Part shown: positions 31,104 to 45,145 of the stretch, in pieces
How the letters are laid out: each line of letters opens with the position of its first letter
How positions within the stretch are numbered: the first letter of the stretch is position 1
Assembly: GCA_002104945.1 (NCBI GenBank)
Contig: MCFH01000003.1
Span: 1,426,001-1,490,000, forward strand
Source of the DNA: Piromyces finnis finn
Taxonomy: Eukaryota; Fungi; Neocallimastigomycota
Reading direction: 5' to 3'
Length of the DNA stretch: 64,000 nt
The notes under the pieces: model-generated
Seen by the model: the letters and a program-made list of their open reading frames with translations, nothing else
Database searches by the model: none
What the model was told of the DNA's origin: nothing
Program-made: the position numbers and the translations under genes

Positions 31104-33560
31104 TTAATAGATCTTTGAGCATTTTGAATTAATTTCTTGACATTTAGAAGCTAAACTTTCAGTGTATGGTTGTGACCAACAGTCATTTAATTCTTCGTAA
31201 CATAATTTTGCCATCTTATTCTTACAGTCATAATCGTTTGAATCACAACTGTAATAATCAATTTCTGGTGATGAGGTTGGAGCTATAACTGTTGTTGTTG
31301 TCTTGGTAATAGTTTTAGTTCTTGTTGTAGTTGGAATGGATTTGGTACTTGTAGTGGTTGGAACGGATTTAGTACTTCTTGTAGTAGTTGGAATGGATTT
31401 GGTAGTAGTAGTGGTTGGAATAACCTTGACAGAGGTGGTAGTAGTAGTTGGAATAACCTTGACAGAGGTGGTAGTAGTGGTTGGAATAACCTTGACAGTG
31501 GTGGTAGTAGTGGTTGGAATAACCTTGACAGAGGTGGTAGTGGTTGGAATAACCTTGACTGAGGTGGTAGTAGTAGTTGGAATAACCTTGACTGAGGTGG
31601 TAGTAGTAGTTGGAATAACCTTAACAGAAGTGGTAGTAGTTGAAATAACCTTGACTGAAGAAGTGGTGGTAGTAAATGGAATATTAGTTAATGGACTTTT
31701 AGTAGTAATTACTGGTGGTGGATTCTTAGAAGTAGTAGTTGAAGTATATGGAACTTTAGAAGTGATGTAAGTAGTTGGTGGAACCTTAGTAGTAGTGGTG
31801 GTTGGTGGTGGGGATTTAGTAGAGGAAGTTGAGGCAGAGGAAATAACAGTGGTGGTAGTAGATTCACTTGAACTTGAAGATTCGACTTCAATGTTTACAC
31901 TGGAATCAGCTGTCCATCCGTAAAGAGTTTCAATCTCTTCAATAAGTTCATAAGCAGCTTCAACATGAGATTGGTGAGCTGGATGCCAGTCAACAGCCTT
32001 ACCATTCTTTGCAATATTTTGAACATTAAATTTGAAGGCATTAACCTTTTCATCACCAGTTTCTGCTTTGTAATTATTAACAGCTTCTTCAACTTGTGGA
32101 TAAAGTTCTTGACCCATAATACCAAGAGTACAGAGAATTTCTGAATCTGGATAAGTGGATCTGATTTTACCTATAAATTCTTGGTATTCAGCAACAAAGG
32201 CAGCAACTTCTGACTTCTTCTTTTCTGAACTCTTAATTCCTTGCATGTATGAATTATCATTAGTACCAAGATTAATAACAATAAGATCTGGAATAAAGTC
32301 TTCAGAGTTCCATGAAACAGTCTTAATTTGAGTAATATCACTTCCAAATTGGTTCCAGTAGGAGAAACCAAGTTTGTCGTAATATTGTGGAAGAGCTGAA
32401 ATAGTGTTTCTTTCACCATCAACAGTATAACCAGAAATTATACCGAAACCACTGTAGGAAACCATACTATAATCAGCATTAAACTTCTTAGCAACCTTGT
32501 AAGCAAAAGACTTAGTACCATCTTCATTCTTAGTTGAGAATGTATCTTTATCGGTACCATCAACACCATAAGCACAAGTAATAGAATCTCCAATAAATTC
32601 AATCTTCTTACTATTAGCTGAAGTTGGTTCAATCTTATCAGAATCAGATTTAATACCATAAATTCTAACTGTACTTTGAGCACATTCAGAAATCTTAATA
32701 AGACTAACAACATGTTCAGAAGCTTCATCAAAAACAATATCTACTTCTTCCTTCTTTGAAAGAAGAGTTACAGAATAAAGTTCTCCATCAGTAAAGATCT
32801 TAAAACGAGCTGGATCACCATCAACTTCAAGATCAATTGTTGTTTGTTTACCTGTAAATTTATATTCAATTCCACTGTCAGTAAGACCAAACCAAAGGAA
32901 TCCCTTTTCTTCGTCATAATTAGCTCTACCAATGATTTTTACATTGTCCTTAGTTGGTTTGAATATGCCATTACTTGAGGCACTTGAAGTTGGCATAGTT
33001 TTAGTGGAAGTAGTAGTAGTTGGAATAACCTTAACGGAAGTAGTGGTAGTTGGAATAACCTTGACGGAGGTAGTGGTGGTTGGAATAACCTTGACGGAGG
33101 TAGTGGTAGTTGGAATAACCTTAACGGAAGTAGTGGTAGTTGGAATAACCTTGACGGAGGTAGTGGTAGTTGGAATAACTTTGACGGAGGTAGTGGTGGT
33201 TGGAATAACCTTGACGGAGGTTGTAGTAGTTGGAATAACTTTGACTGAAGTAGTGGTGGTTGGAATAACTTTAACTGAAGTTGTGGTAGTTTTGGCTGTA
33301 GTAGTTATTACATTTTGTTGTGGACTACCAGTGTAAGACCAAATTTCATTACATATGCTATTTAATTCATTACATTTAGAATAATCAGTTTCAGTTTTCC
33401 AGCATTCATTTGCTTTTTCAAAACAAAGAGTGCTTTGTTTTTGCTTACAAGAATAGTCTGAAGCTTCACAAACAAGATATGGATTGTTTGCTCTTTTTTC
33501 TATAATTGGAATTGCAGATACTGCACTTAATAAAGTAAATAGTGCAAAATTTAATTTCAT
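31104..33560 (-). CDS. Secreted CE2-type SGNH acetyl-esterase flanked by Thr-rich linkers and two 6-Cys modules (818 aa, intronless)
   Basis: Signal peptide + IIEKR. Catalytic region ~31910-32975 has KIEFIGDSITCAYG, SYSGFG, VINLGTND, DWHP (SGNH blocks I, II, III, V) preceded by a beta-sandwich-like CE2 N-domain (KIIGR...SGIEYKFTG). Confidence 0.88.
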   Translation of the reverse strand: MKLNFALFTLLSAVSAIPIIEKRANNPYLVCEASDYSCKQKQSTLCFEKANECWKTETDYSKCNELNSICNEIWSYTGSPQQNVITTTAKTTTTSVKVIPTTTTSVKVIPTTTTSVKVIPTTTTSVKVIPTTTTSVKVIPTTTTSVKVIPTTTTSVKVIPTTTTSVKVIPTTTTSVKVIPTTTTSTKTMPTSSASSNGIFKPTKDNVKIIGRANYDEEKGFLWFGLTDSGIEYKFTGKQTTIDLEVDGDPARFKIFTDGELYSVTLLSKKEEVDIVFDEASEHVVSLIKISECAQSTVRIYGIKSDSDKIEPTSANSKKIEFIGDSITCAYGVDGTDKDTFSTKNEDGTKSFAYKVAKKFNADYSMVSYSGFGIISGYTVDGERNTISALPQYYDKLGFSYWNQFGSDITQIKTVSWNSEDFIPDLIVINLGTNDNSYMQGIKSSEKKKSEVAAFVAEYQEFIGKIRSTYPDSEILCTLGIMGQELYPQVEEAVNNYKAETGDEKVNAFKFNVQNIAKNGKAVDWHPAHQSHVEAAYELIEEIETLYGWTADSSVNIEVESSSSSESTTTTVISSASTSSTKSPPPTTTTTKVPPTTYITSKVPYTSTTTSKNPPPVITTKSPLTNIPFTTTTSSVKVISTTTTSVKVIPTTTTTSVKVIPTTTTTSVKVIPTTTTSVKVIPTTTTTTVKVIPTTTTTSVKVIPTTTTTSVKVIPTTTTTKSIPTTTRSTKSVPTTTSTKSIPTTTRTKTITKTTTTVIAPTSSPEIDYYSCDSNDYDCKNKMAKLCYEELNDCWSQPYTESLASKCQEINSKCSKIY
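31390..31660 (-). repeat. 30/33-bp coding tandem repeat, (TTTT[T]SVKVIP)n, second linker
   Basis: Same unit as 33005-33280 with one extra Thr codon in most copies. Confidence 0.95.
33005..33280 (-). repeat. 30-bp coding tandem repeat, (TTTTSVKVIP)n, about 9 units
   Basis: Unit gtagtggtagttggaataaccttgacggag seen on the + strand. Confidence 0.95.
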
Positions 33561-35028
33561 CTGTTATATTGATATTGATGATTTTTTTAACATATTATGT
33601 GTGTAATAGTTTAATCATTATATTTATTGTTTTTGTACAATTATTATTTATAATTTGAGAATTCAGAATTTTATTTGTTTTTATGTTTAATAAAAAAAAA
33701 AAAGAAAAAAAGAAATGATAATAATACAATAATTAATATAATTTTTATCAATTTTTATTTTTATCTTTTTATACAATATATATATATATTGTTTTTATTA
33801 CCTTGATATTATATATATTTTTTTTATTGCTATTATTATTGATAACTGTTTTTTTTTTTTTTTTTAAATATATAAGTTTTGTTTTTTTTTTTAAAAAGAA
33901 ATGAAATAAAAAAAAAAAGTAAATTGATATTTCAACTTTTTTATTATAAATTGAGTATCTAATTAATAATTGGAAAAATAACCTTTATTATTAATTTAAA
34001 GGTGCTTCTTAATATACTTTTTATTCTTCCAGAGAGTAAAGTTATTTAGAAGTTAATTATCTAACAAAAAATATTATTAATATAATTATTAATCAATAAT
34101 ATTATATCAATATTACTTCAATATTTAAATGTTAAATATTTTTATTCTAAAAAAAAATGAGAAATAAAAAATTATATATCACTTTTTTTTTTTATGTTTC
34201 AGATTATTAATTTATATATCATGGTAGTACAAAAATTAATATTATTATATACAAAATTTCACAATAAATAATTATTTAACTTTTCTATTAATATAATTCT
34301 ATACATTGGTCACAGTGCATATATTTAATATATGATAAATTATATTTGGTATATATTATAGAACCATTCATTTTTACCGCATGAATTAAATGTTTATAAT
34401 AATATCTAAAAATAAATTAAAACTATCCTTTTAATTTTTTAAATAATGAAATTGTTTAATAACAAAATTTATATTTAATAAAGTTTAAATGGATGGAAAA
34501 TTATTTATTAATTAAAACTCTTGATTTCAATATTATAATAAACACGGAAAATTTCAACTTTAATAAATATTATTTCAATTATAATATTAATTCTATTTGT
34601 GAATTATACTAAAAAAAATGATAATAATATATATGTCCTCCGTAATTTTTATTAAATACTTACCAACCATCTCTTTTTTGTTATAATTGTTTTTTTATAT
34701 ATATTGAAAAAGTAAATGAAATAAATAATGATTTGAAATAAAAAAAAGGTTTTATGCTATAGGATAATAGAATTCATTGTTATATGTAACATAAAATTTA
34801 AAAAATGCATATATTTATAGTTATTTATGTAATAAATATAATATTTTTTATTTAAAACATTATATACATAATAATTTGTTGACATTTTATGATATTATTT
34901 ACTATTGTTGAAATATTTTTATCATAATTAATATTAGTAATAATATCTTTTTTTATATCTTTAAAATATATTTAAAAAAAAAATAAGAATTTTAGAACCA
35001 TTTATATATTTATATACATACATATATA

Positions 35029-35032
<4 letters not shown>

Positions 35033-35095
<63 letters not shown>
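35033..35095. repeat. (ATT)n microsatellite
   Basis: About 20 perfect ATT units. Confidence 0.95.
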
Positions 35096-35096
<1 letters not shown>

Positions 35097-35816
35097 TCTT
35101 TTGTTTTATCATTGTTGATCATTTAATATTTGAAAACCTAATTTTATTTATTTAATAATAAATAAGGTTTATTATTAAATTTATACATTTTATTTGAAAA
35201 TTAAAAAATAAATTAAAAAATCTTATTTATAATAATTTATTCATTTTATTATTACCACATGATTTGAATTTACAAAACATAAAAAATATGGTTAGGTTAA
35301 GAATTATAAAAGTATCTGTTCTGTATATTTATTCTTTTATTTTTTAATTATTTTTAAATTATGTATAGGGATTAATAAAATATAAATTACTAGTTTACCA
35401 AGGATGACTTCAATAAGTATACCTCTGGTAGTAAATAATAATAAATAATAATATATATTATAAATATTGGTTTTTAAAATATAATTTTTAATCCTCTTAA
35501 AAAAAATTATCCACTTTCTATAGATGACATATTATACTAAAAAGGAAAAAAGATCGTTTTAAGAAACTTTAATTATTATATAATTATATATTTATTTTTT
35601 TAATTAATTAGAATTATAAATTATATTTAATAATAATAAAATGTATTTTTTAAAAAAAAAAAAAAAAGACATTTTATTAATGAATTATTTAATCCTTTTA
35701 ATAATGTAAATTGAGCCTGTTCATCATTTGAAAATTATTTTACCACGGCTAAAACAGTTTCATTATTGTTATTCAATATATATATGTTAAATATATTTAT
35801 TTTTTTAAAAATATAT

Positions 35817-36479
35817 TTAACGAGATTTTTTATATATAAAACATAAAATCTCTTGTATCAGTTTCTTGTTGGAATTACGTTGACTAAAAAAAATAAATAA
35901 TTGGACTATGGAATCGTAATATTTAATACGGATATCTTTAAATGTTGAACAATCTAATAACCAATGCTTAATACTTAGATCTCCATTTTTGCAACATGGA
36001 CAGTAGTTAGGACAAACTGGATCAACAAATTTAGCAGCTTTTGCAACTCTAGCATCCAACTTGTATCCGCCTAATTTGACATTAGCCTTAAATATTAAAT
36101 ATAAATTTTTGATAAATTGTAAACTCTTACCTCGGATTCCTAAACAATCTAATTTATGGAGAATATTACCGATTGGGACTGAATCGAATGCTTTCCTAAG
36201 ATCTAAAAAGGCCAAATATGTCTCTTTATTATCTAATTGACATATTATCTATGACATATTTCTTGGATTGAAATGAAAAGACTGATACTTTCTTCCTTTT
36301 TTCGAAAGTCAAATTGTTCTGATCTAATGAAATTATTCTTGAAAGCATAAAAAATAATGGTTTGAAAGTAGCTGTGAGATAACTAATACTATCTCTCTTT
36401 TTGTGATTCCACCCATTGGTGTTCCAACTAAGACAAAAAGAAATGTTATCAGGCTTGTTGGATGAGGAAGAATCGTTGC

Positions 36480-36539
<60 letters not shown>

Positions 36540-37460
36540 AGGCATCATTATTAATGGATGATGAGTCAGAGGAATTAGTTGTATTATTATTAGATGGTTG
36601 TGAAACTGAAGAACTATCTACTATTGAACTGTTATCAGAGTTGATAGAACTATTAGAATTAATTGTTGAATGTTGAGGTTGAAATTGTGATTGTTGTAGA
36701 TCTGGAATATTGTCATGTTGGAAATCTTGTTGAAGATCTTGTTGAAGATCAGATTGTTGATGAGATTGTTGAACTGGCTGTTAGATTGATTGTTGATGTT
36801 TATTAGAAACTAAAATTTTACGTTTGAGTAAGGAAAAAAAGTATTTGTGATTCCTTCTACTACAAGCTGAAAAGGAAATTGAAGCAACGGAAGGTTTCTT
36901 CTTTAACATGTGTAAGATTTTAATATAACCTTTCGTTGAACCATGAACCTTGACTAAGAAATAGTGATCATTGAAAATCTGAAAATATTTAACATTAATA
37001 ACTGAATTAAATTTATCCTTCAGAATAACCTCGAGTTTTTCCCATAGCATACTAACTGACCATGATCGAATACCACGGATAAAGAAGGAGCTAATATTAT
37101 CTAAGGGGATACTACAAGAGCGGGTACCACGACTGATATAATTCTTATCTTTAATATAAAAGATTTTCATGATAATTAATTCTAATTAAAAATATTGAAT
37201 ATTAAATAAATACTAATAAAAATTATAAATATAATATATATGGGGGAAAAAACTGTATCTTTCTTCTTAAAAAGTACTGGATAGTACAAAAAATTGTTTC
37301 AATGTTTTGATTATAATTTCTTTTGAAATTCAATTTGTAAATTTTCTTTGTAAATTCTAGTTTTGGTTTGTTGTTTGTTGTTAGTAAATTCAATTCGCTT
37401 TTTTGACTCTAAAATTATTTGACTTTACTTTTCATTAAATATTTAAATTGGAAAAAAACT
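35817..37460 (-). mobile_element. Internally deleted non-LTR retrotransposon (LINE, APE-type), copy C
   Basis: ORF from ATG 37170 (in-frame TAA at 36781), Q/N-rich linker, endonuclease start CLSWNTNGW...LCFQE, then RT start (EQFDFRKKEE...EIC...YLAFLDLRKAFDSVP), then GYKLDARVAKAAK...CPCC-x8-H-x4-C. Its 3' part is near-identical to 40730-40930. 5' limit approximate. Confidence 0.85.
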
Positions 37461-37642
37461 CTGAATCAAGAATGTCGACAACAGAAAGCTTATGAATAGT
37501 ATTTTTACATGATGTAGAGTGAATCAGTCTCTTACAAGAAACAATACAACAATAGCTACATGAATATAAAGATACAATGCAAATGCTAAAGTTACCTACA
37601 TTGGATTCTTACAAGAGAAGAGTAATACTACATGAATACATA

Positions 37643-37771
37643 AATAAAAATTGGGTATAATGTATTCTGGTAATTTTAATTAAAGTAAGAAAACCACTAT
37701 TATACTAAAGTATAATAATTGTATTTGACTTCCAATGGGACACCGAGCCAAAGATCAAAATTTTGTCATGG
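37643..37771 (-). mobile_element. Isolated 129-bp LINE 3'UTR fragment (copy D), same family as copy A
   Basis: Matches 40016-40144 with 3 mismatches; begins at the element's stop codon (CCA TGA). Confidence 0.9.
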
Positions 37772-37862
37772 TAAAACAATTATTTAATTTACATAAAAGT
37801 TTAATTTAGACTTGGAAAAGAATACACTTCTAGTATATATTTATTTAATTTGAAATATTACA

Positions 37863-39859
37863 CTATATTAGGTGATAATACATATTGATATAATAATTAA
37901 TAAAAATAATAAAATATATATATAAAAATATAAAAATAAAATAATTATTAAAGTTGCATAAATGTTCAATGAACTCTGCAATTTGTACTATGTGGGATTG
38001 ATCCCTACCTAATAAATTAAATGAAATAAAAAAGAGAAGTAACAGGTATAATGGTGTGGTGTCCACTAAACTCTCCCATGAGTTCATAATGTTTTCATTC
38101 GAAGAAATACTAACATTGAACCCTGTGTACAGAACACTGAGAATGTTCCTTTGCCATATCGGTACGACGTCGTCGCTCTTGATTACGTTAGGTGTCTTAC
38201 TAAACCTATCAAAAAGTAGCCTCATAGAGCTACTAATGATAGGGACTGTTTTAGTAAGAGAAGCCGCGAGACCCTCTACATATGAAACATGAGACCCCGA
38301 TGAACTGTAAAGCTGTTCATTCAAATGTCTTTGTTCAGCCTTATTGAGACCCTCTACATATGGAACATGAGACCCCGATGAACTGTAAAGCTGTTCATTC
38401 AAATGTCTTTGTTCAGCCTTATTGATTCGTAGCTCATCATAAGCTAAAGTTCCACCAAGAAGGAACGTAAAAATATAGTTATAAATTGTTTTTCTTACTT
38501 CCATTTCAGGGAGTAAGTATGTGATGAATTGATTCTTATATTTATTGTAAAAAAGGGTAAAAAAAATCGTCAAGAAAGCTAAGTGAAGAAGTTCTGTATT
38601 CAGAGAATGCATGACATTCTAAAATCCAATGATAAAAAGATTGTTCATCATATCCACAACATGGACAGACACGAGGGCAGTCAGGAGTAACTCTATTACT
38701 GGCAATAGTAATTCGGGTAGTATTTTCATAACCGCATCGAATACGAATAATCCAGGTAATTCCTAAATTTAAGTGAGGTTTGTTGAGACCGATATGCATT
38801 AGGCGATTTGAATTAAGGAATTTGTTGTTAGTATATCTGAGGGCTTTACTTCCATTATTTAGGCTACTATTATTCCAATAATATTCTCTAATATCTTTAG
38901 TACTTTTAATATTTATTTTCATAAGCTTCTTATGTAGTGAACAAGATTCTTTGGCCCAAAAGTAATGAGACATGGGAGGAATAGATCGGACGAGATCTTT
39001 AATTATACAATTTGATTTTCTCCATTTAACAAAGCATTTCACTTGTTGCGCAGCACAAATACCTGAAAGGGTAGGGATCTTCATATCTCTTGTAAGAGCA
39101 TACAGACTAATAAATGAATTTCGTTCAAAAACAAAATCTTTGTTATTAAAACTTTTATTGTGAAAGCTATTGACACTCCATAAAACAGCAGTATTGATAA
39201 GAGATTGGACTCTTCTAGTTCTATTTTTGTTGGAACCAAGTAAAGGAGCATAATAAGAGACTTTGCTTAAAATATAAGAATGAATTACTATGTTTTTTAA
39301 GCCAATAGGAACACAATTGTTGGTGAGGAAGTTCTTAAAAGAGAATAAAGATTTCTGAACTTTTATGTACATATTAGACAGAATAGGAGTCAAAGAAAGA
39401 TCTTCGTCGAATGGGATTCCAAGATAAGTATAGCAAGAAACCTTTGGAATCGAGTGCATACCGATGTAAAATGTTGGGTCGACATAACTAGGGGATCTAT
39501 TAAAGTTGATAGGTTTAACAACAATAGTTGCACATTTATTTATTCCAAAAGACATTTCATTTAAATTAGCCCAATCAAGGACTAGATTGAGAATCTTTTG
39601 AAGGTTCTTCTTACTAGGAGCAATCAAAACAATGTCATCAGCGAAAAGGCCACCACAACAACGTTTATTACCTAAGCTAACTCCAAGCCTTTCACATTTA
39701 TTTAAAATATCATTGATAAAGAGGTTAAACAGTATAGGAGAAAGAGGACATCCTTGTCTTACACCACGGTTTATAGGGAATTCATTGGAAAGCATATCCA
39801 AGAAACGTGCACGAGCTTTAGAGGTTGAGTAGAGATTATTGAGAAAATCAAAACATTTA

Positions 39860-39862
<3 letters not shown>
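37863..39862 (-). mobile_element. LINE copy B, 3' part: RT core, thumb, CCHC knuckle, C-terminal region
   Basis: RGVRQGCPLSPILFNLFINDIL, GGLFADDIVL, YTYLGIPF, CPCC-x8-H-x4-C. Continues by frameshift at an A-run near 38550 into the 249-aa ORF (IFTFLLGG, aligning with IFKFLLGG of copy A). Confidence 0.92.
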
Positions 39863-39901
<39 letters not shown>

Positions 39902-41659
39902 GGCATCAAATATTTTAAGCTTTATTATTAATTTAATTAAAATTATAATACATGTAATAAAAAAATTAAAATTAAAATAAAAATAAAAAAAAATATGTTT
40001 AAATAAACACAAATGAATAAAAATTGGGTATAATGTATTCTAGTAATTTTAATTAAAGTAAGAAAGCCACTATCATACTAAAGTATAATAATTGTATTTG
40101 ACTTCCAATGGGACACCGAGCCAAAGATCAAAATTTTGTCATGGAACAAAATTATGATCTCCATTGGTTGCGCTGGCCCTCGTGGCCTGTCTTACTGTTT
40201 CTTCAGCATTGACGCTCTTGGATGTTGCTTCAAACCTTTTGAACATTGACCATTGCTGGCCAATAGCAAAAGGCATGATTTTGGTTAGAAGTTCCGCTGT
40301 TACCGTCAAGAATGGTGTTCCTTCATTAGTACCAGATTGAATCTGATGCTTACAAAGTTCTTTCCATTCCCTTGAATTGTAATTGATATTGTTAAAACTT
40401 CTTCCCCCAAGAAGGAATTTAAATATTTTACTGCACACACTAGAATAATCATACACATTAATATTCACCGGATTATTAGAACTATTACTATCATTAACTA
40501 AATTACTATCTAAATTAGAATTATTATCTTCACTATTGCTATCATTACTAATATTGTTATTTCTATTATTGCTATTATTACTATTGTTACTATTACTATT
40601 GTTACTATTACTATTGTTATTACTACTATTGTTACTATTACTATTGTTATTACTACTATTGTTACTATTACTATTAATGTTATTACTATCTCTACTGATA
40701 TTATCAATTTCATTATTATTGATAGGACTATTGGAATTACGTTGACTGAAAAAATTTAATAGCTGGACTATGGAATCATAATGTTTAATACGGATATCTC
40801 TAAATGTTGGACAATCTAATAACCAATGTTTAATACTTTGATCTCCACACTTGCAACATGGACAGTAGTTAGGACAAACTGGATCAACAAATTTAGCAGC
40901 TTTGGCAACTCTAGCATCCAACTTGTATCCGCTTCTTGCTTTCAATAGCCAGTAGAAGCCATAGGCAAACTCTGGGTACTCATAACATAATTTAATAAAA
41001 TCTTTAGTTTCAATAAATTTATTATCATCATAATATTGCGCTTTGATTGAATTCCCTTTGAGATCTTTCCAATAAAAGTTTTTAACTGCTTTAACATCTC
41101 CATGTTTCTTTAATTTTTTATCAAGTGTCCTACTTGATTTGCACCACGTGTATTTTCTAAATTTAGGAATGTAATTGACAAGGTGTGAGATAATACAATT
41201 TGAGTTTTTCCATTTGTTAAAACATCTAACCTGAGCTAACGCACATTTGGCTGACAATGGAGGAATATTCAAATCTTTTGAAAGAGTATAAAGATATAAA
41301 CGATACAGCTTTATGAACTCCGGCAACCCATCGTATTCCTTTGTTAACATGCTTCTGAGCAATCCTAGACCTAGCTTTGTTGGATCCAAGTAATGGTGCA
41401 AAGTATGAAACTCTGCTAATCACTTGTGAGTTAAGTACTAGTTTTTTGAAAGGAATAGGAATATTAGGATTTCTTAAGAATTTACTGACTGAGAAAAGCC
41501 CTTTCAAAACCTTGTTATTAAGAGCTTTAATTACTGGTTTAAGGGACAGATTCTTATCAAATGGAACACCAAGATAAGTATAACAATCAGTAGTTGGAAT
41601 GGGTTGTCCTGCTAAGTAAAATGTTGGATCTCTCTTGATCTGATTTTCTATTGATTCAG
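39863..41659 (-). mobile_element. 5'-truncated LINE copy A inserted into copy B, with a 36-nt poly(A) tail and 13-bp TSD
   Basis: T36 at 39863-39898. Direct repeat AAAACATTTACCA at 39850-39862 and 41660-41672. Encodes thumb (YTYLGVPF), LLGSNK, CCHC knuckle, stop at 40139; one frameshift near 41290. Confidence 0.95.
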
Positions 41660-41802
41660 AAAACATTTACCACGTATACCTAATTTATGTAACTTTGTAA
41701 GGATATTAAAAATAGGAACTGAGTCGTATGCTTTTTTAAGGTCTAGAAAGGCGACATAAGTGGCTTTTCCTTTAAATTTTCTTCTTTGACAGATTTCTCT
41801 AG
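41660..41802 (-). mobile_element. LINE copy B, 5' stub (RT N-terminal motifs)
   Basis: EICQRRKFKGKATYVAFLDLKKAYDSVPIFNILTKLHKLGIRGKCF joins in frame, across the TSD, to GKCFDFLNNLY at 39862. Confidence 0.92.
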
Positions 41803-42406
41803 AGTAATGAGACATGGGAGGAATAGATCGGACGAGATCTTTAATAATACAATTTGATTTTCTCCATAAAAGTTTAATGAACTCTTCAATTTGTACTATA
41901 GCTAATAATAGATCTCTTCAATGACTAACCAAATATCCATTCCCAATTCTTGGATACCCTTAAAAACAAACATTTTTTTATAATATTTATAATTATTTTT
42001 AAACCTTATTAATATAAATCAAATTTAAATAAAATGAAATAAAAAATTTTTATTATTTATATTATTAATAATTTATACTTTATTTGATGATAGTTTAGTA
42101 GTAAAATTTAAATGTTAAAAATTATTAAAATGAAATAAAATAGAACCATTTTTAAAAAAAAATATTTTTTTAATATTAAAAATATTTAACTTTTATTATT
42201 AAATAAAAAAAATAATTATATATATATATTTATATATATACATTTTCTTATAAAATATTATTTATATACTATAATATATTTTAATTAATTATACAATTGA
42301 TAATGTTTTATAATATTTCTTCCTTAAAAATACAATATTAAAATAATACTTTATATTAAAGATTAAATGTTTAATATGATAAATAAATTCTTTACATTAA
42401 ATCCAT

Positions 42407-45145
42407 TTAAGCGTAGATTTTAGAACATTGAGCATTAATAGCATTACATTCAGAAGCTAAACTATCAGAATATGGCTTCTTCCAGCATTCTTGAAGATCG
42501 GCATAGCATTTTTGAGACATTTTGTTCTTACAATCATAGTCATTAGCACCACAGCTAGTGTAGTCAGTTGAAGTTGAAGTTGATGGAACATTTGGTTGAG
42601 AGGTAGCAATTTGTTTAGTAGCAGAAGTAACAATTTGTTTAGTAGCAGAAGTTGTTGGGAGTTGCTTAGAGGCAGCAGAAGTTGTTGGGAGTTGCTTAGA
42701 GGCAGCAGAGGTGGTTGGGAGTTGCTTAGAGGCAGCAGAGGTGGTTGGAAGTTGCTTAGAAGCAGCAGAGGTGGTTGGGAGTTGCTTAGAAGCAGCAGAG
42801 GTGGTTGGGAGTTGCTTAGAAGCAGCAGAGGTGGTTGGGAGTTGCTTAGAAGCAGCAGAGGTGGTTGGGAGTTGCTTAGAAGCAGCAGAGGTGGTTGGGA
42901 GTTGCTTAGAAGCAGCAGAGGTAGTTGGGAGTTGCTTAGAGGCAGCAGAGGTAGTTGGGAGTTGCTTAGAGGCAGCAGAGGTAGTTGGGAGTTGCTTAGA
43001 GGCAGCATTGTTAGTGGTTGGGAGTTGCTTAGAAGCAGCAGAGGTAGTTGGGAGTTGCTTAGAGGCAGCATTGTTAGTGGTTGGGAGTTGCTTAGAAGCA
43101 GCAGAGGTAGTTGGGAGTTGCTTAGAGGCAGCAGAGGTGGTTGGGAGTTGCTTAGAGGCAGCAGAGGTGGTTGGGAGTTGCTTAGAGGCAGCAGAGGTGG
43201 TTGGGAGTTGTTTAGAGGCAGCAGAGGTGGTTGGGAGTTGCTTAGAGGCAGCAGAAGTGGTTGGGAGTTGCTTAGAGGCAGCAGAAGTGGTTGGGAGTTG
43301 CTTAGAGGCAGCAGAAGTGGTTGGGAGTTGCTTAGAGGCAGCAGAAGTGGTTGGGAGTTGCTTAGAGGCAGCAGAAGTGGTTGGGAGTTGCTTAGAGGCA
43401 GCAGAAGTGGTTGGGAGTTGCTTAGAAGCAGCAGAAGTGGTTGGGAGTTGCTTAGAGGCAGCAGAGGTGGTTGGGAGTTGCTTAGAGGCAGCAGAGGTGG
43501 TTGGGAGTTGCTTAGAGGCAGCAGAGGTGGTTGGGAGTTGCTTAGAGGCAGCAGAGGTGGTTGGGAGTTGCTTAGAGGCAGCAGAGGTGGTTGGAAGTTG
43601 CTTAGAGGCAGCAGAGGTGGTTGGAAGTTGCTTAGAGGCAGCAGAGGTGGTTGGAAGTTGCTTAGAGGCAGCAGAGGTGGTTGGAAGTTGCTTAGAGGCA
43701 GCAGAGGTGGTTGGAAGTTGCTTAGAAGCAGCAGAGGTGGTTGGAAGTTGCTTAGAAGCAGCAGAGGTGGTTGGGAGTTGCTTAGAGGCAGCAGAAGTAG
43801 TTGGAAGTTGCTTAGAGGCAGCAGAGGTGGTTGGGAGTTGCTTAGAGGCAGCAGAGGTAGTTGGGAGTTGCTTAGAGGCAGCAGAGGTGGTTGGGAGTTG
43901 CTTAGAGGCAGCAGAGGTGGTTGGGAGTTGCTTAGAGGCAGCATTGTTAGTGGTTGGGAGTTGCTTAGAAGCAGCAGAAGTGGTTGGGAGTTGCTTAGAG
44001 GCAGCAGAAGTGGTTGGGAGTTGCTTAGAGGCAGCAGAAGTGGTTGGGAGTTGCTTAGAGGCAGCAGAGGTGGTTGGGAGTTGCTTAGAGGCAGCAGAGG
44101 TGGTTGGAAGTTGCTTAGAGGCAGCAGAGGTGGTTGGAAGTTGCTTAGAGGCAGCAGAGGTGGTTGGGAGTTGTTTAGAGGCAGCAGAGGTAGTTGGGAG
44201 TTGCTTAGAGGCAGCAGAGGTGGTTGGAAGTTGCTTAGAGGCAGCAGAAGTAGTTGGAAGTTGCTTAGAGGCAGCAGAGGTGGTTGGGAGTTGCTTAGAG
44301 GCAGCAGAAGTAGTTGGGAGTTGCTTAGAGGCAGCAGAGGTAGTTGGGAGTTGCTTAGAGGCAGCAGAGGTAGTTGGGAGTTGCTTAGAGGCAGCAGAGG
44401 TAGTTGGGAGTTGCTTAGAGGCAGCAGAGGTGGTTGGAAGTTGCTTAGAGGCAGCAGAGGTGGTTGGAAGTTGCTTAGAGGCAGCAGAAGTGGTTGGGAG
44501 TTGCTTAGAGGCAGCAGAAGTGGTTGGGAGTTGCTTAGAGGCAGCAGAGGTAGTTGGGAGTTGCTTAGAGGCAGCATTGTTAGTGGTTGGGAGTTGCTTG
44601 GAAGCAGCAGAGGTGGTTGGGAGTTGCTTAGAAGCAGCAGAGGTGGTTGGGAGTTGCTTAGAAGCAGCAGAGGTGGTTGGAAGTTGCTTAGAAGCAGCAG
44701 AGGTGGTTGGAAGTTGCTTAGAAGCAGCAGAGGTGGTTGGAAGTTGCTTAGAGGCAGCAGAGGTGGTTGGAAGTTGCTTAGAGGCAGCAGAAGTGGTTGG
44801 GAGTTGCTTAGAGGCAGCAGAAGTGGTTGGAAGTTGCTTAGAAGCAGCAGTAGTAACAATTTGCTTAGAAGCAGAAGTAATTTGTGGTTGAGATGGTTGA
44901 ACTGGTTGTGGATTTCCAGTGTAAGACCAGATTTCATTACATAAGTTGTTTAATTCAGAACATTTTTGGTAATCACCAGAACTCCAACATTCATTGGCCT
45001 TTTGTTGGCAAAGACTAGCTTGTTCTTGCTTACAACTGTAATCTTCAGTTCCACAAATAAGGTATGGGTTGCTAGCTCTCTTTTCCATAATTGGAAGAGC
45101 AGAAACACAACTGGCAACAGCTAATAAAACTAAACTGAATTTCAT
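42407..45145 (-). CDS. Secreted mucin-like protein with no catalytic domain: 6-Cys module, (TTSAASKQLP)n, 6-Cys module (912 aa, intronless)
   Basis: Signal peptide + IMEKR. N- and C-terminal Cys modules align closely with those of 31104-33560 (NPYL[VI]C...CNEIWSYTG; DYxSC..NDYDCKNKM..C...CSKIY). Confidence 0.92.
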   Translation of the reverse strand: MKFSLVLLAVASCVSALPIMEKRASNPYLICGTEDYSCKQEQASLCQQKANECWSSGDYQKCSELNNLCNEIWSYTGNPQPVQPSQPQITSASKQIVTTAASKQLPTTSAASKQLPTTSAASKQLPTTSAASKQLPTTSAASKQLPTTSAASKQLPTTSAASKQLPTTSAASKQLPTTSAASKQLPTTNNAASKQLPTTSAASKQLPTTSAASKQLPTTSAASKQLPTTSAASKQLPTTSAASKQLPTTSAASKQLPTTSAASKQLPTTSAASKQLPTTSAASKQLPTTSAASKQLPTTSAASKQLPTTSAASKQLPTTSAASKQLPTTSAASKQLPTTSAASKQLPTTSAASKQLPTTSAASKQLPTTSAASKQLPTTSAASKQLPTTSAASKQLPTTNNAASKQLPTTSAASKQLPTTSAASKQLPTTSAASKQLPTTSAASKQLPTTSAASKQLPTTSAASKQLPTTSAASKQLPTTSAASKQLPTTSAASKQLPTTSAASKQLPTTSAASKQLPTTSAASKQLPTTSAASKQLPTTSAASKQLPTTSAASKQLPTTSAASKQLPTTSAASKQLPTTSAASKQLPTTSAASKQLPTTSAASKQLPTTSAASKQLPTTSAASKQLPTTSAASKQLPTTSAASKQLPTTSAASKQLPTTSAASKQLPTTSAASKQLPTTSAASKQLPTTNNAASKQLPTTSAASKQLPTTNNAASKQLPTTSAASKQLPTTSAASKQLPTTSAASKQLPTTSAASKQLPTTSAASKQLPTTSAASKQLPTTSAASKQLPTTSAASKQLPTTSAASKQLPTTSAASKQLPTTSAASKQLPTTSATKQIVTSATKQIATSQPNVPSTSTSTDYTSCGANDYDCKNKMSQKCYADLQECWKKPYSDSLASECNAINAQCSKIYA
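42648..44849 (-). repeat. 30-bp coding tandem array, about 73 units
   Basis: Unit gaggtggttgggagttgcttagaggcagca on the + strand; variation almost all synonymous; four 33-bp TNN variants at 43006, 43069, 43942, 44575. Confidence 0.98.

What the first reader, a model, noticed from the sequence alone, without database searches (positions are those of the whole stretch)
31104..45145. Unrecognised 6-cysteine module capping both ends of two secreted proteins: candidate non-dockerin attachment or assembly system
Four copies (~33336-33482, 31107-31260, 44927-45067, 42410-42565) share C-x3-DY-x-C-K-x6-C-x6-C-W-x7-11-C-x6-C-x2-I-[WY]. The roughly heptad Cys spacing suggests a disulfide-stapled helical hairpin. 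It does not fit the patterns I know for the fungal dockerin/CBM10 (CW...GYPCC...WGVEN..WC), CBM1 or CBM18. N-terminal copies resemble each other, and C-terminal copies resemble each other, more than N resembles C, so the two ends may be specialised. The module sits exactly where dockerins/CBMs sit on anaerobic-fungal CAZymes. It could be a new CBM, or an N-to-C interaction pair able to chain proteins into a complex parallel to the cellulosome.
Basis: partly seen in the sequence, partly recalled or inferred. Interest (0 to 1): 0.85.

Follow-up and report, generated by a model that had tools for sequence, protein, structure and literature searches.

The report
New terminal six-cysteine module, gut fungi
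Two neighbouring secreted proteins of an anaerobic gut fungus carry, at both ends, a small disulfide-locked two-helix module that matched no Pfam family or solved structure; the same module sits on cellulases, xylanases, esterases and mucin-like proteins of gut fungi where a dockerin would normally be, so it is probably a new surface-targeting or binding module.

Summary
Four copies of a ~50-residue six-Cys module lie at the reported coordinates and cap both ends of two intronless secreted proteins. One is a CE2 acetyl esterase; the other is an enzyme-free protein with 73 ten-residue repeats.

The module is a real family. A profile of the four copies found 27 true protein clusters among 1.84 billion proteins. 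Every cluster whose source names an organism comes from Neocallimastigomycota. A DNA-pattern scan of metagenome contigs added 56 loci.

Partners are CE2, GH5, GH11, S8 proteases, Agd3-type deacetylases (two tandem copies) and many enzyme-free proteins with K-x-[LIV]-P repeats. None of the 32 scanned proteins has a dockerin. Pfam and PDB sequence searches gave no significant match, and fold searches returned only generic helical hairpins.

AlphaFold2 predicts an N-terminal arm plus a two-helix hairpin (pLDDT 94). N-terminal copies form one separate branch (support 99/98) and occur only with a C-terminal copy.

A natural N-linker-C protein folded as two independent domains (pTM 0.36), so an N-to-C pairing system gains no support.

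My best reading is a lineage-specific, dockerin-independent targeting module for an insoluble surface. The closest known kind is CBM104, which is also a disulfide-bridged helix pair. The ligand is untested.

Other first-reader notes from this scan flagged what may be the same module on GH5, GH10 and CE18 genes of this genome.

The parts
31104..33560 (-). Gene 1, 818 aa, intronless. Order: signal peptide and KR site, N-type module, TTTTSVKVIP repeats, CE2 esterase (CE2_N + GDSL/SGNH), Thr/Pro/Lys repeats, C-type module, stop.
   Evidence: ORF. Pfam CE2_N 2.3e-09 and Lipase_GDSL 5.5e-16. Nearest solved chain is 2WAO, the CE2 domain of C. thermocellum CelE, 1.7e-33. Neocallimastix relatives with the same N-module / CE2 / repeats / C-module order: P0002 and P0033.
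33330..33491 (-). N-type six-Cys module of gene 1 (ANNPYLVC...CNEIWSYT), starting at the predicted mature N terminus after EKR.
   Evidence: Pattern match 33339-33470; alignment; 89.5 bits to the module profile; inside the N-type branch.
31107..31271 (-). C-type six-Cys module of gene 1 (..DYYSC...CSKIY-stop), the last 55 residues.
   Evidence: Pattern match 31107-31247; 96.3 bits; AlphaFold2 model m130efc650598, pLDDT 93.9, arm plus two helices.
32932..33329 (-). N-side linker of gene 1: about 9.5 copies of a 30-nt unit encoding TTTTSVKVIP.
   Evidence: Tandem repeat at 33006-33291, period 30, 9.5 copies; translation.
31272..31770 (-). C-side Thr/Pro/Lys-rich linker of gene 1, with ..SVKVIP.. 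and ..KSIP.. units.
   Evidence: Tandem repeats at 31314-31683, periods 27-33 and 96; translation.
42407..45145 (-). Gene 2, 912 aa, intronless. Order: signal peptide and KR site, N-type module, about 73 copies of SAASKQLPTT, C-type module, stop. No catalytic domain.
   Evidence: ORF; only an insignificant Pfam row (Dicty_spore_N, E 2.4); tandem repeat 42644-44850, period 30, 73.2 copies, 95% matches. L035 has the same N-module / repeats / C-module layout with a different repeat unit that keeps K-T-L-P.
44915..45076 (-). N-type six-Cys module of gene 2 (ASNPYLIC...CNEIWSYTG).
   Evidence: Pattern match 44927-45055; 82.6 bits; inside the N-type branch.
42410..42574 (-). C-type six-Cys module of gene 2 (..DYTSC...CSKIYA-stop).
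   Evidence: Pattern match 42413-42553; 97.7 bits.

Best explanation
The four copies belong to a domain family that I found in no Pfam family, solved structure or searched paper. It appears confined to anaerobic gut fungi (Neocallimastigomycota).

The domain is about 50 residues: a short N-terminal arm packed on a two-helix hairpin, with six invariant cysteines that probably form three internal disulfides. It comes in two positional forms. The C-type ends the protein (..C-x-K-I-W plus 0-3 residues). The N-type begins the mature protein (A-x-N-P-Y-L-[VI]-C..).

I read it as a non-catalytic targeting or binding module. Connected by long, probably O-glycosylated linkers, it would tether secreted enzymes and mucin-like glycoproteins to an insoluble extracellular surface, independently of the dockerin-scaffoldin cellulosome. 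The surface would most likely be a polysaccharide: plant cellulose, or the fungus's own wall or matrix. In that role it would work like CBM1 or CBM104 on the free enzymes of other fungi. Proteins with a module at both ends, or two in tandem, would bind bivalently.

Shown here: the family, its fold prediction, its architectures, its taxonomic range and purifying selection. Inferred: the disulfides, the glycosylation, any binding, and the ligand.
For: 1. It is a real, conserved family. The profile search found 28 hits in 1.84 billion proteins, 27 of them true. The DNA-pattern scan found 69 loci, 56 of them with the module. dN/dS is 0.27.

2. Every hit whose source names an organism is from Neocallimastix, Anaeromyces or Pecoramyces. 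The unnamed loci average 34% G+C and are about the size of single transcripts.

3. The fold is confidently predicted and independent. pLDDT is 93.9 for the single module. The same arm-plus-two-helix fold appears in both N and C types inside P0003.

4. It has the positional grammar of an appended binding module. It is always at an extreme terminus, behind Thr/Ser/Pro/Lys linkers. Partners are GH5 (nearest solved chains 3AYR and 8GHX), GH11, CE2, S8 protease and Agd3-type deacetylase, plus many enzyme-free repeat proteins.

5. No dockerin (CBM_10) was found in any of the 32 family proteins scanned.

6. Copy number varies as it does for avidity-driven binders: one C, two C in tandem (L037 cluster), or N plus C.

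7. Aromatic content is high, about 5 per 47 residues in the C-type. Aromatics are conserved at alignment columns 15, 26 and 33 of helix 1. These positions are i, i+11 and i+18, so they fall on one helical face with a conserved small residue (Ser/Ala) at column 22 (the geometry is my inference).

8. There is a precedent. CBM104 is a pair of alpha-helices fixed by disulfides, appended C-terminally to CAZymes, and binds crystalline cellulose I only when the disulfides are present (PMC12678898).
Against: - I could not tell whether the aromatic stripe is exposed or buried under the N-terminal arm. The disulfide pattern is undetermined.
- Partners such as S8 proteases and Agd3-type deacetylases are not typical carriers of cellulose-binding modules. 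The ligand could therefore be the fungal wall or matrix, or a protein.
- The N-type lacks the middle aromatic (Gln at column 26), so the two types need not share a ligand.
- Fold searches return only generic helical hairpins, which also serve as protein-protein interaction units.
Confidence: 0.55

Rival explanations
1. A second, dockerin-like protein-docking system. The module would bind a protein receptor, such as an unidentified scaffold, or possibly the K-x-[LIV]-P repeat units of the mucin-like family members themselves. This would assemble enzymes on a glycoprotein scaffold in parallel to the cellulosome.
For: - The module is terminal, sometimes tandem, never seen together with dockerins, and sits on the same catalytic families that elsewhere carry dockerins.
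- The partner range is broad and includes proteases, like that of fungal dockerins.
- Helical hairpins are common protein-interaction units.
- K-x-[LIV]-P or K-x-P-P motifs occur at 2-8 per 100 residues in about 25 of 39 family proteins, against 0.09 in other window ORFs. The K-x-L-P core is kept while the rest of the repeat unit changes: SAASKQLPTT in gene 2, GSQPTAAKTLP in L035.
Against: - No receptor has been identified.
- GH5, Agd3-type and S8 members lack the K-x-[LIV]-P linkers.
- In the P0003 model the linker, which contains one AKTLP, stays disordered and undocked.
- I could not check whether the motif is simply a common anaerobic-fungal linker type.
Confidence: 0.2
2. An N-to-C pairing system. 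N-type and C-type modules would bind each other, chaining the two-ended proteins head to tail into polymers. Enzymes with only a C-type module would dock onto free N-type ends.
For: - N-type and C-type are distinct, conserved subfamilies, separated by a split with support 99/98.
- Every complete protein with an N-type module also has a C-type module: window genes 1 and 2, P0002, P0003, P0017, L018, L035, L046, L070.
- One conserved position is Glu in the N-type and Lys in the C-type (..EIW versus ..KIW).
Against: - AlphaFold2 folds the natural N-linker-C protein P0003 as two independent domains: pTM 0.36, linker pLDDT below 50. This is weak evidence, because the alignment had only 9 rows and no multimer run was possible.
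- Most members are C-only, and Agd3-type enzymes carry C-C tandems.
- Each chain would offer a single N-type acceptor, which makes a poor scaffold.
- Both types are net acidic: -3.5 for the N-type and -1.7 for the C-type.
Confidence: 0.1
3. Purely structural end caps. The disulfide-locked termini would protect the extended glycosylated linkers from exopeptidases in the protease-rich gut, or form intermolecular disulfide cross-links in a wall or matrix network. They would have no specific ligand.
For: - The module sits strictly at the extreme ends of the mature protein.
- Many carriers consist of nothing but repeats plus the cap.
- Six cysteines are invariant.
Against: - Non-cysteine surface positions are strongly conserved (D14, K18, W33, I55, W56 and the aromatic stripe), beyond what a cap would need.
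- Tandem C-C copies add nothing to capping.
- Enzymes such as GH5 would gain nothing from a long linker that ends only in a cap.
- An even number of cysteines and a confident monomer model point to internal disulfides.
Confidence: 0.1

Closest known systems
CBM104 (cellulose-I-specific binding domain of Gloeophyllum trabeum LPMO9A-2 and other Agaricomycete AA9/AA8/AA16/GH131 proteins; PMC12678898)
   Same: - Small, fungal, appended to secreted plant-cell-wall enzymes through a linker, usually at the C terminus.
- Predicted as two alpha-helices held in fixed orientation by disulfide bonds.
- The same module serves several catalytic families.
   Different: - CBM104 has four conserved cysteines (two disulfides). 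This module has six, plus an N-terminal arm.
- CBM104 was found only in Agaricales, Gloeophyllales and Russulales by tblastn over JGI fungal genomes (PMC12678898).
- I could obtain no CBM104 sequence for a direct comparison.
- This module also occurs at N termini, in tandem, on proteases and Agd3-type enzymes, and on enzyme-free repeat proteins.
Fungal dockerin / CBM10-type non-catalytic docking domain of anaerobic fungi
   Same: - Same organisms.
- About 40-50 residues, six cysteines, terminal, sometimes tandem.
- Attached to the same catalytic families (GH5, GH11, CE) through linkers.
   Different: - No Pfam CBM_10 match even at E<=10.
- Different cysteine spacing and conserved residues.
- Predicted all-helical. 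My recollection, not checked here, is that the solved fungal dockerin is a small beta-sheet fold.
- Never found in the same protein as a dockerin in the 32 proteins scanned.
CBM1 (fungal cellulose-binding domain)
   Same: - Positional grammar: a small disulfide-rich module at the extreme N or C terminus of free secreted enzymes, behind an O-glycosylated Ser/Thr/Pro linker.
- Rich in conserved aromatics.
   Different: - No Pfam CBM_1 match.
- CBM1 is a 36-residue beta wedge with four cysteines.
- The partner range here includes proteases, Agd3-type enzymes and mucin-like proteins.
Acanthamoeba Leo-S cyst-wall lectins (PMC11423589)
   Same: - Architecture of gene 2: a secreted protein with a lineage-specific cysteine-knot domain at each end of a long Thr-rich spacer.
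- N-terminal and C-terminal domains fall in separate clades.
- No Foldseek match for the domain.
   Different: - Unrelated fold: 8-Cys sets of four disulfide knots linking short loops, not helices.
- Cellulose binding through three aligned tyrosines was shown by mutation for Leo-A; nothing has been shown here.

Membership tests
Fungal dockerin (Pfam CBM_10, PF02013) | Significant match to the CBM_10 profile | tested here: not met
   hmmscan of the four modules and both full proteins at E<=10 lists no CBM_10. None appears in 30 further family proteins.
CBM1 / CBM18 (hevein) / CBM52 | Significant match to Pfam CBM_1, Chitin_bind_1 or the CBM52 model | tested here: not met
   No such rows for the modules at E<=10. 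A sub-threshold Chitin_bind_1 match (E 0.003, 18 bits against a cut-off of 27.8) lies elsewhere in protease P0022, not in the module.
CBM104 | Two alpha-helices bridged by two disulfide pairs | tested here: inconclusive
   AlphaFold2 predicts two helices with three cysteines on helix 1, two on helix 2 and one on the N-terminal arm. The cysteine count differs: six here, four in CBM104 (PMC12678898).
CBM104 | Detectable sequence similarity to GtAA9-CBM104 | tested here: inconclusive
   No CBM104 sequence could be obtained for a direct comparison. Indirectly negative: the module profile returned no named protein outside Neocallimastigomycota in 1.84 billion proteins, and the CBM104 authors' tblastn over JGI fungal genomes returned only Agaricomycetes (PMC12678898).
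CBM104 | Specific adsorption to native crystalline cellulose I | not testable with these tools
   Needs recombinant protein and cellulose adsorption assays.
Carbohydrate-binding module in general (CAZy definition) | A contiguous, independently folding sequence within a carbohydrate-active enzyme | tested here: met
   Confident stand-alone fold. Found on CE2, GH5, GH11 and Agd3-type (CE18) enzymes.
Carbohydrate-binding module in general (CAZy definition) | Demonstrated carbohydrate-binding activity | not testable with these tools
The aromatic stripe on helix 1 is an inference from the alignment.
CE2 acetyl esterase (catalytic part of gene 1) | N-terminal CE2 jelly-roll plus SGNH/GDSL domain with the GDS motif | tested here: met
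   CE2_N 2.3e-09 and Lipase_GDSL 5.5e-16. The GDS motif is seen in ..IEFIGDSITCAYG... Nearest solved chains are CE2 domains: 2WAO 1.7e-33 and 3U37 2.1e-27.

The most novel reading that the evidence does not exclude
Anaerobic gut fungi may run a second extracellular assembly system beside the cellulosome. The six-Cys terminal modules would be its docking units, and the mucin-like proteins built of dozens of K-x-[LIV]-P units, such as gene 2 of this window, would be its scaffolds or matrix. Enzymes (GH5, GH11, GH10, CE2, Agd3-type, S8) would then be displayed on a glycoprotein coat at the rhizoid or plant interface through module-repeat or N-type to C-type contacts.
Probability: 0.12. Interest if true: 0.9.

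Novelty: new variant of a known kind. Interest (0 to 1): 0.62.

Why it matters
Anaerobic gut fungi are among the strongest degraders of plant fibre, and only one enzyme-targeting system, dockerin-scaffoldin, is recognised in them. This module marks a separate set of secreted proteins: cellulases, xylanases, acetyl esterases, exopolysaccharide deacetylases, proteases and many mucin-like glycoproteins.

If it binds cellulose or the fungal wall, it is a candidate new CBM family. It would be a compact (about 50 residues), disulfide-stabilised tag useful for enzyme engineering. It would also explain how enzymes that lack a dockerin stay at the fibre or rhizoid surface.

It matters for annotation as well. 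Public gene models of the CE2 relative are truncated before the repeats, so the module has been missed.

Tried and rejected
- Word-indexed protein searches, using the module region of gene 1 and of P0016, found only self or a near-identical paralogue. They are too insensitive for this short domain.
I replaced it with a degenerate DNA pattern.
- The PDB sequence-profile search gave no hit. Foldseek gave nothing at E<=0.001. VIA-align against all representatives gave a best Z of 6.2, all generic helical hairpins and below the tool's stated noise level for helical models.
- The weak Pfam rows (Dicty_spore_N, Psg1, BAP, DNA_pol3_delta; E 0.05-2.4) were rejected as noise.
- P0009, a 1316-aa TPR-repeat protein, was rejected as a false positive of the profile search.
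- Charge complementarity between N and C types was not found.
- Internal cysteine-rich units of P0017 align to the module only weakly (hhalign probability 13%, E 0.002), so I did not count them as members.
- A first alignment for the two-module fold placed all pieces on the N-type module. I replaced it with full-length N+C proteins.
- Five literature searches found no description of the module.
- Earlier-findings look-ups by words and by sequence returned nothing.
Full report
**What is in the window.**
The region lies in very AT-rich DNA, 13-25% G+C outside coding stretches. It holds two uninterrupted ORFs on the minus strand, 31104-33560 (818 aa) and 42407-45145 (912 aa).

Both begin with a signal-peptide-like sequence followed by a dibasic site (..AIPIIEKR, ..ALPIMEKR; read by eye).

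Gene 1 runs in this order:
- an N-terminal six-Cys module;
- about 9.5 copies of TTTTSVKVIP;
- a CE2 acetyl esterase (CE2_N 2.3e-09, Lipase_GDSL 5.5e-16; nearest solved chain 2WAO, the CE2 domain of Clostridium thermocellum CelE, 1.7e-33);
- further Thr/Pro/Lys repeats;
- a C-terminal six-Cys module that ends the protein.

Gene 2 has the same two end modules around about 73 copies of SAASKQLPTT and no catalytic domain.

The 9 kb between the genes carries reverse-transcriptase fragments of non-LTR retroelements.

**Check of the observation.**
The four copies share 13 invariant columns. The two N copies are 68% identical; N versus C copies are 38-45% identical. Between the two paralogues the N modules have dN/dS 0.27. 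The C modules have saturated synonymous sites with pN 0.22. These are old duplicates under purifying selection.

**A family, and whose.**
A profile of the four copies was searched with HMMER against 1.84 billion representative proteins. It gave 28 hits at E<=0.001, 13 of them at E<=1e-10. One hit, P0009, is a TPR-repeat false positive.

Every hit whose source names an organism comes from Neocallimastix californiae, N. lanati, Anaeromyces robustus or Pecoramyces ruminantium. The rest come from JGI metagenome or metatranscriptome contigs about the size of one transcript.

A degenerate DNA pattern for D-[WY]-x-C-K-x6-C-[YF]-x5-C-W found 69 metagenome loci. Fifty-six of them encode the module and average 34% G+C; they fall into 19 protein clusters.

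No named protein from outside the anaerobic fungi appeared. I did not test that.

**Architectures.**
Pfam scans of 30 family proteins, plus the two window proteins, show the module on:
- CE2, single or double (L070, 1508 aa);
- GH5 endoglucanases, nearest solved chains 3AYR and 8GHX;
- GH11 xylanases;
- S8 subtilases;
- full-length Agd3-type deacetylases (CBM87 + Agd3_CE + Agd3_C; nearest 6NWZ), which end in two tandem C-type copies;
- at least ten clusters of enzyme-free proteins made of a signal peptide, Thr/Lys/Pro repeats and one C-type module.

None carries a dockerin.

The C-type module always ends the protein within 0-3 residues after K-I-W. The N-type always starts 1-3 residues after the predicted signal-peptide or KR cleavage site.

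Every complete protein with an N-type module also has a C-type module. The reverse is not true.

Public gene models of the Neocallimastix CE2 relative stop at the end of the catalytic domain, and an old 392-aa partial sequence lacks both ends. That may be why the module went unnoticed.

**N-type versus C-type.**
Mean identity is 50.5% within the N-type, 39% within the C-type and 34% between them. Fixed differences include NPYL[VI]C against DY[YF]SC, Gln against Met/Lys at column 21, Gln against Tyr at column 26, and E-I-W against K-I-W.

In a maximum-likelihood tree of 43 modules, the 11 N-type copies form one split with support 99/98.

**Fold.**
AlphaFold2 on a 32-row alignment gives mean pLDDT 93.9 and pTM 0.71. 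The model has an ordered N-terminal arm (residues 1-13, carrying Cys1), helix 14-32 (Cys2-4), a short loop and helix 38-52 (Cys5-6).

Coordinates are not returned, so I could determine neither the disulfide pairing nor solvent exposure.

Searches against known families and structures found nothing specific:
- Foldseek against the PDB finds nothing at E<=0.001.
- An exhaustive structural alignment to 48,161 representative chains gives a best Z of 6.2, all generic hairpins and below the tool's stated noise level for helical models.
- A sequence profile against all PDB chains gives no hit even at E<=10.
- Pfam gives only noise for the modules.

**Test of the N-to-C pairing idea.**
P0003 is a natural 160-aa protein made of signal peptide, N-type module, a 33-residue linker and C-type module. 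Folded with an alignment of nine full-length N+C proteins, it gives two separately confident domains (pLDDT about 80-85), a linker below 50 and pTM 0.36. There is no predicted packing.

Net charges are -3.5 +/- 1.0 for the N-type and -1.7 +/- 2.3 for the C-type, so they are not complementary.

Most members are C-only, and Agd3-type enzymes carry C-C tandems. Taken together, this makes an obligatory N-C pair unlikely. It is not excluded, because the alignment was shallow and no multimer prediction was possible.

**What it most likely does.**
The module behaves like an appended binding module:
- it is small, disulfide-rich and strictly terminal;
- it sits behind long, probably O-glycosylated linkers;
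- it is shared among unrelated catalytic domains;
- it is sometimes duplicated;
- it was never found with a dockerin in the proteins scanned.

The C-type carries about five aromatics in 47 residues. Alignment columns 15 (Trp/Tyr), 26 (Tyr/Phe) and 33 (Trp) are i, i+11 and i+18 on helix 1. They therefore lie on one helical face about 16.5 and 10.5 Å apart, with a conserved Ser/Ala at column 22 between them. That spacing is close to three and two glucose units of a beta-1,4 chain. This is my inference, and the face may instead be covered by the arm.

A precedent exists. CBM104 of Agaricomycetes is a pair of alpha-helices fixed by two disulfides, appended to AA9, AA8, AA16 and GH131. It adsorbs only to native crystalline cellulose and loses binding when the disulfides are absent (PMC12678898).

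The two-ended gene 2 resembles the Acanthamoeba Leo-S lectins. Those have a cysteine-knot domain at each end of a Thr-rich spacer, with N and C domains in separate clades; their close relative Leo-A binds cellulose through three aligned aromatics (PMC11423589).

On the other hand, the Agd3-type partner acts on the fungus's own exopolysaccharide, and the S8 partners are not fibre enzymes. The ligand may therefore be the fungal wall or matrix, or a protein.

I put about 0.55 on 'targeting or binding module for an insoluble surface'. Polysaccharide is the most likely ligand class. The remainder is about 0.2 for a dockerin-like protein-docking role, 0.1 for N-C chaining and 0.1 for a ligand-free cap.

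**Comparison with known families, and novelty.**
Membership in CBM10/dockerin, CBM1, CBM18 and CBM52 was tested by profile and not met.

CBM104 is the closest known kind, but it differs in cysteine number, in lacking the arm, and in taxonomic range. Neither my profile search nor the CBM104 authors' tblastn over JGI fungal genomes links the two families. A direct comparison was not possible because I could not obtain a CBM104 sequence.

Five full-text literature searches found no description of this module.

I therefore class it as a new variant of a known kind: a new domain family within the known concept of appended non-catalytic targeting modules.

Other first-reader notes of this scan flag what looks like the same module on GH5, GH10 and CE18 genes elsewhere in this genome. 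I found GH5 and Agd3-type (CE18) carriers independently in metagenome contigs, which agrees with those notes. I did not see those windows.

Noticed in passing
window 42644-44850 and 33006-33291; loci L014, L016, L018, L026, L031, L035, L046, L060, L007: The linkers of most family members are built from repeat units of different length and composition that all keep a K-x-[LIV]-P (or K-x-P-P) core: SAASKQLPTT, TSVKVIP, NAKTLPVT, GSQPTAAKTLP, TKTIP, KAPP/KNPPP. Density is 2-8 per 100 residues, against 0.09 in other window ORFs. It is absent from GH5, Agd3-type and S8 members. It might be a glycosylation or cross-linking site, or a binding motif. I could not test whether it occurs outside this family.
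   Followed up: partly
L037:145-2787:+ (also L011, L045, L049, L068): Anaerobic-fungal transcripts encode a full-length homologue of the Aspergillus galactosaminogalactan deacetylase Agd3 (CBM87 + Agd3_CE + Agd3_C; 6NWZ 1.2e-81) that ends in two tandem C-type six-Cys modules. This suggests a GAG-like exopolysaccharide pathway in gut fungi.
   Followed up: partly
P0030/P0031 (NCBI KAL6623780.1, ORY62832.1) and P0032 (UPI000006A258): Public gene models of the Neocallimastix relative of gene 1 are 'partial' and stop exactly at the end of the CE2 domain (..LYGW), before the repeats and the C-type module. A 392-aa older entry lacks both ends; I suspect it is the BnaB cDNA of N. patriciarum, which I recall from the literature and did not check.
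   Followed up: partly
window 35817-41666: The spacer between the two genes holds reverse-transcriptase (RVT_1) ORF fragments of non-LTR retroelements, with poly-T/poly-A and Asn/Ser-rich low-complexity stretches. The two module-bearing genes are therefore an old tandem pair split by retroelement insertions.
   Followed up: partly
L070:78-4601:-: A 1508-aa relative of gene 1 carries two CE2 units (two CE2_N + GDSL stretches) between an N-type and a C-type module.
   Followed up: no
P0022 residues ~466-506, P0024 (Anaeromyces robustus S8 subtilases): Between the protease domain and the linker lies a hevein-like cysteine motif. Its Pfam Chitin_bind_1 match is sub-threshold (E 0.003, 18 bits against a 27.8 cut-off). 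These proteases may therefore carry a chitin-binding unit as well as the six-Cys module.
   Followed up: partly
P0017 residues 124-585 (Pecoramyces), P0027, P0025: These proteins hold internal, repeated six-Cys units with altered spacing (C-x4-C-K-x6-C-x2-C-x13-C-x6-C) between KSLLPGVPNPS linkers, flanked by regular N-type and C-type modules. They align to the module only weakly (hhalign probability 13%, E 0.002). They may be degenerate internal copies.
   Followed up: partly
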